Below are positions 8,939-13,014 of a stretch of DNA of 18,337 bases, in pieces. The DNA comes from Zygophlyctis sp. KS116. Lineage: Eukaryota > Fungi > Chytridiomycota. A program made the translations under genes and the position numbers. The notes beneath the pieces are model-generated. The model was not told where the DNA came from. It was given only the letters and a program-made list of their open reading frames with translations, and ran no database searches. The DNA is taken from positions 1-18,337 of the forward strand of contig BAAFSQ010000198.1 of assembly GCA_054661495.1 (NCBI GenBank), written 5' to 3'. Positions within the stretch are counted from its first letter, which is position 1. Every line of letters begins with the position of its first letter.

Positions 8939-10678
8939 ATGATTGTTGTATTTTTAGAAACAGTAGATCATTGTTGCCAAGACCAAGGAAAAATTAAATC
9001 AAAAGGATTACTTGCACTAGATGATAACCACTCTCTAGTAGAATGGAATTTAAAACATTTTCCTATTGGTAAAGTGTTTTTAGTCGTTAATGCATCCTGG
9101 TATTTGACTCTAAATTAAAATCAGCATACAAGAATATTCGGAAAACCTGGGCTCGGAGATGCAACATTTGCCAATTATAAACACGGGGATTTGTGATCAA
9201 GATTTGAATCAGAGGTATCAATCACTAATAATTTTATAGAGATTTGATCATGAAAAGTATACAAATATTCGGACTTTGGAATGGGTTTCCTAAAGATGAG
9301 GAAATCGTATTTATTACGTCTGATAACTGTTATGAAGGAGGAATTTATGGATCACAAGAGGGGCTATCAGAGTTTAAAGAGTCATTTATAGTTACAGATC
9401 ACTCTCATGGTAGGATATGTATGATTGGAGTGGCTGTAAAGGACTCTGATAAATTTTGGAATGGATTTTATGGACAGAATAGAATAGATTGGGAGTCGGC
9501 TGAGTCAGTGTTTTCACATTTTAGCAAATATTCCTATAGCGAATTATCAAAATCTGATATTTGGGCAAGGATAGTAACTGAAAATCAGTATAAAGACTTC
9601 TTAAACAAGTTTCCAATAACTAAAATAGCACAAAAAAGGGAAAATATTTTAGTTAAATCATATGCACGGGTTGGGTTGATTGGAAATCCCTCAGATGGCT
9701 TTTATGGAAAGACAATTTCGTTTTTACTAAAGAATTTTTATGCTGAAATCTCAATTATCCCACATTCTGATCCTAAAAACGAACAAATAGTGATTGATGA
9801 TGTTGTCAGTTTTTCATGTTCTAACTCTGTTTTATCATGTATTAAAAGGAATGGATATGATGGAGTATCTAGACTTTTGCTTGCTACCATTGTAGTTTTT
9901 TACAATTACACGATAAATTACGAAAAATGTAAACAAGGTTTTACAATTCATTATGAAACAAATATTCCAAGACAAGTTGGACTTTCTGGAAGTTCTGCTA
10001 TAGTTGTAGGACTACTCAAGGCTCTCATATTATATTATAAAATTGAAATTCCTCTAGAAATTCAAGCAAATTTAGCACTTTCAGCTGAACAAGATGAACT
10101 CCACATTGCTGCTGGGTTGCAAGATCGAGTAATCCAAACTTTCGGTGGACTCTTGTATATGGATTTTAATAAGCAAACTATGACAAAACATGGTTTTGGA
10201 ATATATGAACCACTTGACGTCAAAAAATTACCCAATCTTTGGATCGCATATTGTTCTAATCCAAAGGAATCTGGCAAAGTACATTCAAACGTAAGACAGT
10301 AAGTTTACTTTTTTTTAATTTTTTAGACGTTTTATAGATCAAGATTCTAGAGTTTTGGAGGCCATGGAAAAGTTTGCATCTTTTGCAGAACAAGCAAAGC
10401 AGGATCTTTTAAAAGGAGACTTTGAACATTTGTCATTTCTCATGAATGAGAATTTTAATCTAAGACGCAGTATTTATGGAGATGAAGTGATTGGTGAAAT
10501 GAACCTGCAAATGATTAACCTGGCACGATCATATCGAATGGCAGCCAAGTTTTGTGGATCTGGTGGTTGTATTATCGGAATGCATTGTGGTCCTCAGGAA
10601 CTGAAAGACAAGGATATTTGGGATTTTCGATTTGCATTGGCTAGGTGTGGTTTCAATTTTGCCGAGGTTAAAACGTGA
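8939..10678 (+). CDS. Glucuronokinase (GHMP kinase) fused to a degenerate N-terminal nucleotidyltransferase-like domain (GKUP-type), 4 exons, ~553 aa
   Basis: Introns at 9100-9124, 9215-9239 and 10299-10326. Glucuronokinase motifs YARVGLIGNPSDGFYGKTISF, YETNIPRQVGLSGSSAI, AGLQDRVIQ, ESGKVHSNVRQR, MNENFNLRR and KFCGSGG. Confidence 0.88.
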
Positions 10679-12667
10679 TGTCAACCAGCGAGACAACACC
10701 TCTCATTTCCCAATCTGTAGAGTTTGATTAATAAATATTTAGAATATGTCTATTCCCGAAAGGCCTGAAACTTCTGATGCTGAAGCTGAGGAAGATGGAC
10801 AATTTAGTTTCTGTACATCACAGAGGCTGCTGATTAGGTATCGAACGGGTTTTAAAGTATAGTTTTATAATATTATTTTGTATTGGTATTCTAGTGGCTG
10901 TAGCTTCTCTGTTCTTTTTGGAGATGGGAAATTCCAGTCCAAATCCACCGCTGCCTCCACGGGCGATTCAGATAACTGCTGGAAAGGCTGCAGTTTCATC
11001 AGAAAATAAGATTTGTTCTGATATCGGTGTAAAAGTCATTCATGATGGAGGATCGGCTGTTGATGCGGCCATCGCCACTACGATTTGCATTGGAACTGTC
11101 AATAGTAAGCTGGTTTGAAATAATACTCAGGCTATTCATCGGGAATTGGTGGCGGAGGCTTTGCAATTGTAAGAGAGGCTAATGGAGTTTCAAAAGCATT
11201 AGATTTTAGAGAAGAAGCTCCAAATTCTGCATATACAGACATGTTTAAGAATGATACGAGTCAAGCTGGGGGGAAAAGTGTTGCCGTTCCTGGAGAACTA
11301 AAGGGACTTGAATATATGCATAAAAAGTATGGAGTTCTTCCTTGGGATCGTCTTTTTCAGCCTTCAATCGCATTGGCAAGAGAAGGATGGGAAGTCAATC
11401 GTATTTTAGCTTCACGTTTAGTGTCGGCCAATGACACTATTTTAGGAAATCCAGAGTTTAGAAAAGTATTTGCACCAAATGGAAAGTTGCTGGTTGAGGG
11501 AGAACGGGTTAAAAGGGAAGTTTTTGCAGACACTTTGGAGATTATAGCTAAAAATGGTGCAGATGAATTTTATACGGTAAATTTTGAGAAATAATATTAG
11601 GGGTCACTAGCAAATGAATTGGTGTCATTTATAAACGAGAATGGAGGAAATATGACATTGTCCGATTTTGCATCTTATAAAGTACGTGTAAATGAACCCC
11701 TTTATGGATTTTATCATGGTAAAAAGGTCGTAACAACCCCGCTTCCAGCAAGTGGACCGGTCCTGATTTCTATTCTTAATATTCTGGAGGGATTTGTTGA
11801 TTCCAAAAATGATCATTTTATCAATATTCACAGAATTGTAGAATCTTTTAAATTTGGATATGCCCAGAGAACTTATGTATTTAAATTACTTGATTTAATT
11901 AATATATAGTACGGAGATCCTGTAGATACCATATATAAAAATATTTCAGATATAGCTGCTGCGTTTATGACAAAAATGAAAGCCGAAGAAATTAGAAAGA
12001 AGATCAGTGATGTATTTTTCCTTTTTTATAATCGTAGAAAAGAACTTTCCCTGTCGATTACTATGATCCTGCTTTTGATGTCAGTGAAGACAAGGGCACT
12101 ATGCACGTTTCCGTTCTTTTGAGTGACGGTTCGGCGGTCTCCTTGACTTCTACTATAAATCTTTTATTCGGATCCAAGCTCATGAATCCTGCAACTGGGA
12201 TTATTCTTAACAACGAGATGGATGATTTTTCTGTTCCAGGAACAAAAAATTATTTCGGTCTACCTCCATCTCCATACAATTTTATTCAGCCAGGTAAAAG
12301 ACCTCTATCTTCCTGTATTCCGACTATTGTAGAAACTGATGGTGAAGTAAATGTAGTGATTGGTGCATCAGGCGGATCAATGATAACATCGTCCGTGATA
12401 AATGTTTTACTATCAATACTCAACTTTCACAAGGATCCTTTAGCCTCTCTATTAGAACCGCGAATTCACCATCAGCTTATTCCCAATGGTGTAGTTACTG
12501 AGCCTGAATTTGATGGTATAGTAGAAGAAGCACTTAAAAGGCGCGGGCATGCAGTTATGCGATTAGACAAATATATGACTGGAGTTGGAGTCATTGAAAG
12601 AAAAAGTAATGGGCTAATTTTGGCTGCTGGTGACTGGAGAAAAGGCGGCGAAGCTTCGGGATATTAG
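10678..12667 (+). CDS. GGT: Gamma-glutamyl transpeptidase (vacuolar type II membrane, Ecm38-like), 7 exons, ~609 aa
   Basis: Introns at 10717-10742, 10838-10862, 11105-11130, 11577-11600, 11877-11909 and 12012-12037. It has an N-terminal ETTPLI sorting signal, a TM helix, GGSAVDAAIA, SSGIGGGGF, DFRE, VAVPGE, the catalytic G-T-MHVS (Thr codon at 12098), LNNEMDDFS and PGKRPLSS. An alternative in-frame start is ATG 10746. Confidence 0.92.
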
Positions 12668-13014
12668 TTTACTGTTCCTTTTAAAGTTGTTATTAGAAAA
12701 GAAATTAAACAATTTAACTAAATATTTAAGGCGTTATTTAGAAAGTACTTATATACCGAGAATGAGTATGAATCGCCGGGCTTTCAAGATTGTCCGAACA
12801 TGCTCATCAATGTCACGATCTAGAATTGAAATGAAAAAGTAAGCACAGCCAAAGTAGCAATAGATGGATACTTTTGTTTTATATAATATTTTAAAAATAT
12901 CTTTTTAACTGCGCCAAATGTTTAAGAAAGATCTTTGATTGCCATGCAAAAGTTACCAACTAGAGATTTCGGACATAGGCTAATCGGGGCAATTCAAATA
13001 GGAAGAGTTCCACC

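What the first reader, a model, noticed from the sequence alone, without database searches (positions are those of the whole stretch)
10670..10750. Bacterial-style TGATG stop/start overlap coupling glucuronokinase to GGT in a eukaryote
Seen: the glucuronokinase stop TGA (10676-10678) shares its A with an ATG (10678-10680). That ATG opens MSTSETTPLISQS, which a typical 26-nt GT-AG intron (10717-10742) joins in frame to the GGT body. Established: [DE]xxxL[LI] (here ETTPLI) is the acidic dileucine vacuolar-sorting signal typical of fungal vacuolar membrane hydrolases, which supports this ATG as the real start. UGAUG overlaps mediate translational coupling in bacterial operons and termination-reinitiation in some viruses. 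Inference: with no intergenic space, either a spliced bicistronic mRNA is translated by reinitiation, or the GGT promoter/5'UTR lies inside the kinase CDS while the kinase 3'UTR runs through GGT. Either would be unusual for a nuclear fungal locus.
Basis: partly seen in the sequence, partly recalled or inferred. Interest (0 to 1): 0.8.

Follow-up and report, generated by a model that had tools for sequence, protein, structure and literature searches.

The report
Touching kinase and GGT genes
In a very compact freshwater chytrid-like fungus, the stop codon of a sugar-kinase gene shares one base with the start codon of the next gene (a glutathione-degrading enzyme). This is real, but it is the zero-gap extreme of gene packing seen across this genome, not a special bacterial-style coupling of these two genes.

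Summary
The kinase stop TGA (10676-78) shares its A with ATG 10678-80. That ATG opens a 13-codon first exon of the GGT gene, joined by an ordinary 26-nt intron.

Six related metagenome contigs keep the kinase->GGT order, the mini-exon, its ExxxL[LI] motif (6 of 7 loci) and the intron. Only the 97%-identical relative keeps TGATG. The others have spacers of 2, 8, 16, 16 and 75 nt, so the overlap is derived and not selected.

Two named chytrids lack the adjacency. In a 218-kb sample of this 12.7-Mb genome, about 8 of roughly 100 same-strand gene boundaries have spacers of 10 nt or less. Four of them join unrelated genes confirmed by Pfam, with spacers of -1 to +1.

The scan has noted the same thing on other contigs of this genome (mevalonate kinase/SHY1, OXLD1/COA4, Chs5/Elp6, RNA14/RRG7 and others).

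No RNA data could be obtained, so the expression mode is inferred. The most likely mode is overlapping transcription units, as in microsporidia. A bicistronic mRNA with reinitiation is not excluded.

Two local oddities remain: an invariant AATAAA in GGT intron 1 and an invariant CGTGA at the kinase stop.

The parts
8939..10678 (+). GHMP kinase gene of the glucuronokinase family. Its last intron is 10299-10326 (28 nt) and its last exon is 10327-10678.
   Evidence: PF00288 hit. Named homologues are glucuronokinases at about 50% identity. Intron. C-terminal exon aligned with relatives.
10619..10623 (+). TGGGA, 57 nt upstream of the stop. It resembles TURBS motif 1 of viral termination-reinitiation signals, but it is simply the codons Trp-Asp.
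   Evidence: present in 6 of 7 loci, TGGAA in L001. (PMC2793014) for the viral motif; not a general feature of tight junctions.
10674..10680 (+). CGTGATG: the invariant CGTGA (end of the last sense codon plus stop TGA), overlapping the GGT start ATG by one base.
   Evidence: CG before a stop occurs at 2% of sampled gene ends and TGA at 25%.
10678..10716 (+). GGT exon 1: 13 codons, MSTSETTPLISQS, carrying the acidic dileucine-type motif ETTPLI.
   Evidence: Conserved in L010, L007, L008, L009, L001 and L002, with length differences in whole codons. S. pombe Ggt2 starts MSPTDTTPLL.
10717..10742 (+). GGT intron 1 (26 nt, phase 0), containing the invariant AATAAA at 10730-10735.
   Evidence: Scores at the median of 97 sample introns. 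AATAAA is invariant in 7 loci but found in only 1 of 97 genome introns. It lies at the usual branch-site distance.
10743..10837 (+). GGT exon 2: the acidic cytosolic tail. It holds ATG 10746, which is not conserved.
   Evidence: the ATG is ACG in L010, and there is no in-frame ATG in the other loci.
10838..10862 (+). GGT intron 2 (25 nt).
   Evidence: It is the only link that restores the membrane-anchor frame.
10863..12667 (+). The rest of the GGT gene: exon 3 (10863-11104, with the signal anchor) and further exons to the stop TAG at 12665-12667. Other introns include 11105-11130 and 12012-12037.
   Evidence: PF01019 hits covering profile positions 2-512 across the exons. Introns. Stop.

Best explanation
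The TGATG is the zero-spacer end of gene packing across a compact chytrid-like lineage. It arose when an ancestral spacer of a few to about 16 nt between two unrelated neighbouring genes was deleted on the branch leading to the window and its closest relative.

Shown:
- The gene models.
- The conserved 13-codon first exon, which supplies an N-terminal ExxxL[LI] sorting-type motif ahead of a type II membrane anchor.
- The variable spacer.
- The frequency of equally tight junctions elsewhere in the genome.

Inferred: the two genes are expressed as overlapping but separate transcription units, as in microsporidia and nucleomorphs.
- GGT transcription would start inside the last exon of the kinase gene, with a short 5'UTR.
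- The kinase mRNA would end inside the 5' part of GGT, possibly using the invariant AATAAA in GGT intron 1. Splicing removes that hexamer from the GGT mRNA.
For: - Seven loci keep the order kinase->GGT with spacers of -1, -1, 2, 8, 16, 16 and 75 nt. In the tree, the window and L010 are sisters and every other lineage has a positive spacer.
- The next junction, GGT->IQ gene, is 23-39 nt in four relatives.
- In the 218-kb genome sample, 82% is covered by coding-like ORFs.
- Spacers from -20 to +10 occur at about 8 same-strand gene boundaries. Pfam confirms unrelated partners at four of them: a COG4 C-terminus to the next ORF (-1, TAATG), NMD3 to Glyco_transf_49 (+1), RNase_T to a zinc-finger protein (+1) and CutC to peptidase M1 (0).
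- The kinase is not next to GGT in Rhizoclosmatium or Globomyces, so this is not an old functional unit.
- AATAAA lies 52 nt after the kinase stop and is invariant in all 7 loci, while the orthologous introns 2, 3 and 6 are not conserved and only 1 of 97 genome introns holds this hexamer.
- Precedent: transcripts that start in upstream genes or end in downstream genes in E. cuniculi and A. locustae (PMC3629993).
- Earlier scan notes list further touching pairs in this genome.
Against: - There is no RNA evidence of any kind.
- No conserved promoter-like motif was found upstream of start codons.
- The kinase's last exon shows no extra synonymous-site constraint: 0.70 against 0.69 in a control exon.
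- A[AT]TAAA is not enriched after stops at other tight junctions (4 of 16, against 13% in coding controls).
- The AATAAA sits exactly where a branch site is expected, so reading it as a poly(A) signal is only a hypothesis.
Confidence: 0.55

Rival explanations
1. The kinase and GGT are mainly expressed from one spliced bicistronic mRNA. [quoted passage not shown]
For: - Spacers are 16 nt or less in 6 of 7 loci.
- No promoter signal or extra constraint is detectable in the kinase 3' CDS.
- UGGGA lies 57 nt before the stop in the window and is present in 6 of 7 loci (UAUGGGAA in L009). This falls within the 34-73 nt range of viral TURBS motif 1.
- Fungal ribosomes reinitiate after long ORFs across a 9-bp spacer (PMC10352335) and at the UAAUG of hypovirus CHV1 (PMC2699510).
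- Read-through polycistronic transcripts exist in Agaricomycetes (PMC4503453).
Against: - The overlap is not conserved. L002 has a 75-nt spacer containing two short uORFs.
- UGGGA is fully determined by the Trp-Asp/Glu codons and is broken in L001.
- UGGGA is not enriched at other very tight junctions (1 of 7, against a baseline of about 10%).
- No stable or conserved RNA structure is present (z from +1.6 to -1.1).
- The invariant AATAAA just downstream suggests that kinase mRNAs end there.
- In Agaricomycetes, co-transcribed genes are also transcribed on their own, and read-through may repress the downstream gene.
Confidence: 0.22
2. The gene model is wrong. GGT starts at ATG 10746, the 26-nt stretch is not an intron, and the TGATG is a meaningless coincidence in a 5'UTR.
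For: ATG 10746 is in frame and lies 4 nt after the proposed intron.
Against: - That ATG is ACG in the 97% relative L010 and absent in L001, L002, L007, L008 and L009. In those loci the only start upstream of the membrane anchor is the mini-exon ATG.
- Mini-exon lengths differ by whole codons (11-16 codons), whereas intron lengths (26-29 nt) do not.
- The intron scores at the median for the genome.
- The N-terminus matches S. pombe Ggt2, MSPTDTTPLL.
Confidence: 0.03

Closest known systems
Overlapping transcription units in compacted eukaryotic genomes (microsporidia such as Encephalitozoon cuniculi and Antonospora locustae; nucleomorphs)
   Same: Near-zero or negative spacers between unrelated genes across the genome. 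Control signals must therefore lie inside neighbouring genes. Transcripts start in upstream genes or end in downstream genes (PMC3629993).
   Different: Here the host is a chytrid-like fungus with many ultra-short introns (mode 26-27 nt). The overlap involves a spliced mini-exon, and transcripts have not been observed.
Fungal bicistronic or polycistronic expression (Glarea lozoyensis IGG1 and the 9-bp IGG6; read-through transcripts in Agaricomycetes)
   Same: Same-strand neighbouring genes with a very short inter-ORF spacer. Reinitiation after a long upstream ORF has been shown in yeasts and filamentous fungi (PMC10352335). Polycistronic reads are reported in mushrooms (PMC4503453).
   Different: No bicistronic RNA has been shown here. 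The spacer sequence and length are not conserved, and the partners are not functionally related or tandem duplicates.
Viral termination-reinitiation at UAAUG/UGAUG with TURBS (caliciviruses, influenza B M1/BM2, hypovirus CHV1)
   Same: A stop/start pentanucleotide, with a UGGGA-containing stretch 57 nt upstream, within the 34-73 nt range reported for motif 1 (PMC2793014, PMC2699510).
   Different: The motif is explained by the Trp-Asp/Glu codons, is absent in one relative and is not enriched at other touching junctions. The overlap itself is not conserved, and there is no supporting structure.
Prokaryotic translational coupling at ATGA/TGATG overlaps
   Same: The identical pentanucleotide geometry (PMC6728339).
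   Different: That mechanism needs a polycistronic mRNA and 70S/30S retention. Here it is a nuclear spliced gene pair, there is no operon-like conservation of the overlap, and the downstream ORF is split by an intron 39 nt after its start.
S. pombe Ggt2 and other fungal type II membrane GGTs; E/DxxxLL AP-3 sorting signals of yeast vacuolar membrane proteins
   Same: The N-terminus MSPTDTTPLL in S. pombe Ggt2 against MSTSETTPLI here. The E/DXXXLL motif in a cytosolic tail ahead of a membrane anchor (PMC8859911, PMC2132875).
   Different: The localisation of this GGT is untested. Here the motif is encoded on a separate 13-codon exon.

Membership tests
Translational coupling by overlapping stop/start (operon type) | The stop of the upstream ORF overlaps the start of the downstream ORF | tested here: met
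   TGATG at 10676-10680. The same junction is present in L010.
Translational coupling by overlapping stop/start (operon type) | Both ORFs lie on one mRNA | not testable with these tools
No RNA-derived sequence was found.
Translational coupling by overlapping stop/start (operon type) | The overlap or close coupling is kept by selection among relatives, and the partners form a conserved unit | tested here: not met
   Spacers are -1, -1, 2, 8, 16, 16 and 75 nt. The adjacency is absent in two named chytrids.
Termination-reinitiation with TURBS | [quoted passage not shown] | tested here: inconclusive
   Present at -57 in the window and in 6 of 7 loci. It equals the Trp-Asp/Glu codons, is TGGAA in L001, and is not enriched at other tight junctions. 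The organism's own 18S was not read.
Termination-reinitiation with TURBS | Dependence on upstream RNA sequence or structure | tested here: inconclusive
   Folding z-scores run from +1.55 to -1.12 in six loci.
Overlapping transcription units of compacted eukaryotic genomes | High gene density across the genome, with near-zero spacers between unrelated genes | tested here: met
   82% of the sample is coding-like. About 8 junctions have spacers of 10 nt or less in 218 kb, four of them checked by Pfam.
Overlapping transcription units of compacted eukaryotic genomes | Transcripts that begin in the upstream gene and/or end in the downstream gene | not testable with these tools
   No RNA data.
Gamma-glutamyltranspeptidase (PF01019), type II membrane form | A full-length G_glu_transpept domain, an N-terminal signal anchor and the nucleophile Thr motif | tested here: met
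   Exon-wise Pfam hits span profile positions 2-512. The anchor FIILFCIGILVAVASLFFL lies in exon 3. GTMHVS is present in the last exon. The joined protein was not searched.
Glucuronokinase (GHMP kinase) | A GHMP kinase N-domain, with closest named relatives annotated as glucuronokinase | tested here: met
   PF00288 at E 3e-12. Named hits at about 45-55% identity include plant, fish and fungal glucuronokinases. The substrate is untested.
Acidic dileucine (E/DxxxL[LI]) AP-3-type sorting signal | The motif lies in a cytosolic tail of a membrane protein and is conserved among orthologues | tested here: met
   ETTPLI, ETTPLL, ETSPLL, ENAPLL and ETAPLL account for 6 of 7 loci; L009 has ETEPFL. S. 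pombe Ggt2 has DTTPLL. Function in sorting was not tested.

The most novel reading that the evidence does not exclude
A splice-or-polyadenylate switch driven by the kinase promoter alone.
- Transcripts that leave the 26-nt GGT intron 1 unspliced are cleaved at its invariant AATAAA and give kinase mRNA.
- Transcripts that splice it lose the signal and run on as a bicistronic mRNA.
- GGT is then made from that mRNA by termination-reinitiation at the overlapping or nearby AUG, perhaps helped by the UGGGA stretch 57 nt upstream.

If this were general, it would be a eukaryotic nuclear solution for expressing touching genes without intergenic promoters.
Probability: 0.08. Interest if true: 0.8.

Novelty: new member of a known kind. 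Interest (0 to 1): 0.35.

Why it matters
Taken alone, the locus is one more example of extreme gene packing, and it does not show operon-like coupling.

It is, however, a well-documented test case with seven orthologous junctions and spacers from -1 to 75 nt. The broader question is how a fungus with no intergenic DNA between many tandem genes places promoters and poly(A) sites, and whether some downstream genes are translated from read-through mRNAs.

The comparative data also fix the true N-terminus of this GGT. They show that a dileucine-type N-terminal motif shared with S. pombe Ggt2 sits on its own 13-codon exon. That is useful for annotating such genomes, because ORF-based callers miss mini-exons of this kind.

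Tried and rejected
- **RNA evidence.** I did not try to get round this.
- **Metagenome scan.** A scan with the kinase C-terminal alignment found only 41-43% relatives. The close relatives came from the protein word search plus contig look-ups.
- **More genome sequence.** All genome-wide numbers therefore rest on 218 kb.
- **Shared promoter motif upstream of starts.** None found, only a weak A-rich Kozak context.
- **CGTGA as a general upstream motif.** Not enriched.
- **TGGGA as a general mark of touching junctions.** 3 of 6 in a first crude set (p about 0.02, and other pentamers score as well). This fell to 3 of 16, and 1 of 7 for the tightest, once junctions were defined better. Rejected as general.
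- **AATAAA/ATTAAA as a general poly(A) signal after stops.** Only weak, non-specific enrichment.
- **RNA structure at the junction.** None.
- **Synonymous-site constraint in the kinase's last exon.** None.
- **Fusion by read-through, frameshift or an alternative GTGA donor at the stop.** The frames are inconsistent among loci and stops follow at once (inspection).
- **Spliced, transcript-derived GGT N-termini.** The search of the 1.84-billion-protein library found only exon-sized ORFs of close relatives.
- **Rfam.** Nothing in the window.
- **Joined models.** Exons were searched one by one.
Full report
**Observation.** The window reads ...GTT AAA ACG TGA TG TCA ACC AGC GAG ACA ACA CCT CTC ATT TCC CAA TCT gtagag...tttag AAT ATG TCT....
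- The kinase stop TGA is at 10676-10678 and shares its A with ATG 10678-10680.
- The ATG opens 13 codons (MSTSETTPLISQS).
- GT-AG at 10717-10742 (26 nt) joins them in frame to exon 2. Unspliced, the frame ends at TAA inside the intron.
- Pfam finds GHMP_kinases_N in the upstream gene and G_glu_transpept, exon by exon, over profile positions 2-512 in the downstream gene.
- The kinase's best named relatives are glucuronokinases of plants, fish and early-diverging fungi at about 45-55% identity.
- I add that intron 2 is 10838-10862 (25 nt). Only this link restores the frame of the membrane anchor FIILFCIGILVAVASLFFL that opens exon 3.

Exons were searched separately.

**The organism.** The window is a whole contig (C198) of a 12.73-Mb assembly in 1175 contigs. 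Earlier scan notes describe it as an uncultured, very compact freshwater chytrid-like fungus with 24-33-nt introns. In my own 218-kb sample (the window plus 20 stretches of 10 kb):
- 82% of bases lie in coding-like ORFs.
- 97 unambiguous introns are 23-33 nt long, with a mode of 26-27 nt.
- GGT intron 1 scores at the median of these introns.

**Relatives.** Protein word searches with the kinase exons, followed by contig look-ups, gave six metagenome contigs with the same kinase->GGT order on one strand. Identities on the kinase C-terminal exon are: L010 97%, L007 75%, L002 74%, L008 71%, L001 65% and L009 64%.

All six keep a first mini-exon:

| Locus | Mini-exon peptide |
|---|---|
| L010 | MSTSETTPLLSQS |
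| L007 | MSETSPLLAQN |
| L008 | MSTAETTPLLAQA |
| L009 | MASNVTEETEPFLSQN |
| L001 | MSTDENAPLLNQN |
| L002 | MSTNDETAPLLAQN |

- Mini-exon lengths differ by whole codons (11-16 codons). Intron lengths do not (26-29 nt).
- The second ATG of the window (10746) is ACG in L010 and is missing everywhere else. In those loci no other in-frame ATG lies ahead of the membrane anchor.
- ExxxL[LI] is kept in 6 of 7 loci.
- S. pombe Ggt2 (O14194) begins MSPTDTTPLL.
- E/DXXXLL is the AP-3 dileucine signal of yeast vacuolar membrane proteins (PMC8859911; PMC2132875).

**The overlap is not conserved.** The spacer from the kinase stop to the GGT ATG is:

| Locus | Spacer (nt) |
|---|---|
| window | -1 |
| L010 | -1 |
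| L009 | 2 |
| L001 | 8 |
| L007 | 16 |
| L008 | 16 |
| L002 | 75 |

- In L002 the spacer holds a duplicated GAAAATGTCAA and two short uORFs.
- In a tree of the last GGT exon, the window and L010 are sisters, L009 branches first, and all other lineages have positive spacers (the inner forks are not resolved).
- The window junction equals the L001 junction minus 9 nt.

The overlap is thus a recent deletion of a short spacer, not a selected feature.
- The frame offset between the two ORFs also varies, which excludes fusion by frameshift or read-through.
- The adjacency is absent in Rhizoclosmatium globosum and Globomyces sp., so the pair is not an old functional unit.
- Its retention within the clade is what short intergene distance alone predicts (PMC2258174).

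**The locus is ordinary for this genome.**
- At the next junction, GGT->IQ-domain gene, the spacer is 23-39 nt in four relatives.
- I screened coding-like ORF ends in the 218-kb sample for a nearby ATG opening another coding-like ORF, and scored possible introns with a matrix built from the 97 introns. This gave about 16 likely gene-gene junctions with spacers of 53 nt or less, eight of them 10 nt or less: -20, -1, -1 (this locus), 0, +1, +1, +5 and +10.
- Pfam confirmed unrelated partners at four of them:
  - a complete COG4 C-terminus followed by another ORF at TAATG (-1);
  - NMD3 followed by Glyco_transf_49 (+1);
  - RNase_T followed by a zinc-finger protein (+1);
  - CutC followed by peptidase M1 (0).
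- With roughly 100 same-strand boundaries in the sample, about 8% are this tight.
- The scan noted the same on other contigs: mevalonate kinase/SHY1, OXLD1/COA4, Chs5/Elp6, RNA14/RRG7, a LYR gene and RraA/LRR. I treat those notes as leads that agree with my own counts.

**How it is expressed.** No RNA evidence was available. Two models remain.

*(1) Overlapping separate transcription units.* This is the known solution in microsporidia, where transcripts start in upstream genes or end in downstream genes and 5'UTRs are very short (PMC3629993).
- Locally, an AATAAA 52 nt after the kinase stop (10730-10735, inside GGT intron 1) is invariant in all seven loci.
- By contrast, orthologous introns 2, 3 and 6 have diverged, and only 1 of 97 sample introns contains this hexamer.
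- This fits a poly(A) signal for the kinase mRNA that splicing removes from the GGT mRNA.
- Caveats: the hexamer sits exactly at the usual branch-site distance, and A[AT]TAAA is not enriched after stops at other tight junctions (4 of 16, against 13% in coding controls).

*(2) A bicistronic mRNA with reinitiation.* This is not far-fetched in fungi.
- A 9-bp spacer supports reinitiation after long ORFs in several fungi (PMC10352335).
- Hypovirus CHV1 uses UAAUG (PMC2699510).
- Read-through polycistronic RNAs occur in Agaricomycetes (PMC4503453), green algae (PMC7896298) and Cryptosporidium (PMC11761812).
- A UGGGA stretch lies 57 nt before the stop in the window and occurs in 6 of 7 loci (UAUGGGAA in L009, identical to the murine norovirus motif 1; PMC2793014).

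Against this second model:
- The motif is simply Trp-Asp/Glu. The Trp is specific to this clade.
- It is TGGAA in L001.
- It is not enriched at the other very tight junctions (1 of 7, baseline about 10%).
- There is no unusual RNA structure.
- The variable spacer with uORFs in L002 argues against a tuned stop-start signal.

In favour of neither model:
- I found no promoter motif.
- There is no extra synonymous constraint in the kinase's last exon.

I put model 1 at about 0.55 and model 2 as the main route at about 0.22. The rest goes to mixtures of the two and other readings.

**Unexplained.** CGTGA (the last sense codon NCG plus TGA) is invariant in all seven loci, although the C-terminal residues and their number vary. 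CG before a stop is seen at 2% of sampled gene ends and TGA at 25%. It is not a general upstream motif.

**Verdict.**
- The gene model and the sorting-motif inference are supported.
- The 'bacterial-style coupling' reading is not supported as a property of this gene pair.
- Novelty: a new member of a known kind (overlapping gene expression in compacted eukaryotic genomes), here in a chytrid-like fungus.
- Interest is moderate to low for the locus and higher for the genome-wide question, which needs RNA data.

Noticed in passing
window 10674-10678; L001 1753-1757; L002 3530-3534; L007 1723-1727; L008 624-628; L009 890-894; L010 4311-4315: CGTGA (third-position G of a rare NCG codon plus stop TGA) is invariant at the kinase gene end in all seven loci, although the C-terminal peptide varies in sequence and length. 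CG before a stop occurs at 2% of sampled gene ends. The cause is unknown.
   Followed up: partly
window 10730-10735 and the same place in intron 1 of L001, L002, L007, L008, L009 and L010: AATAAA is invariant inside the 26-29-nt first GGT intron, whereas it occurs in 1 of 97 sampled introns of this genome. It may be a poly(A) signal of the upstream gene hidden in an intron, or an unusual conserved branch region.
   Followed up: partly
L002 3535-3612: The kinase-GGT spacer is 75 nt here because of an insertion that repeats GAAAATGTCAA. The insertion creates two short upstream ORFs before the real GGT start.
   Followed up: no
window 12668-13014 (and L010 6306-6621): The GGT->IQ-domain gene spacer is 347 nt in the window and its close relative, but only 23-39 nt in L001, L007, L008 and L009. 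The extra DNA holds a small ORF (MSMNRRAFKIV...) of unknown status.
   Followed up: no
L002 2050-3534; L009 1082-1813: Intron loss or gain among close relatives. The L002 kinase is one uninterrupted 494-codon ORF, where the window has introns. L009 lacks GGT intron 3.
   Followed up: no
L014 4406-4413 (+); L014 7166-7171 (-); L022 6410-6415 (-); L025 8670-8674 (-): Further touching same-strand gene pairs of unrelated function in this genome: COG4 to an unknown ORF by TAATG, NMD3 to a Glyco_transf_49-like gene (+1), RNase_T exonuclease to a zinc-finger protein (+1), and CutC to peptidase M1 (0).
   Followed up: partly
window 10355-10675 and relatives (alignment A3): The Trp in the kinase motif DIW[DE]FR is specific to this clade. 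Other glucuronokinases have no Trp there.
   Followed up: partly
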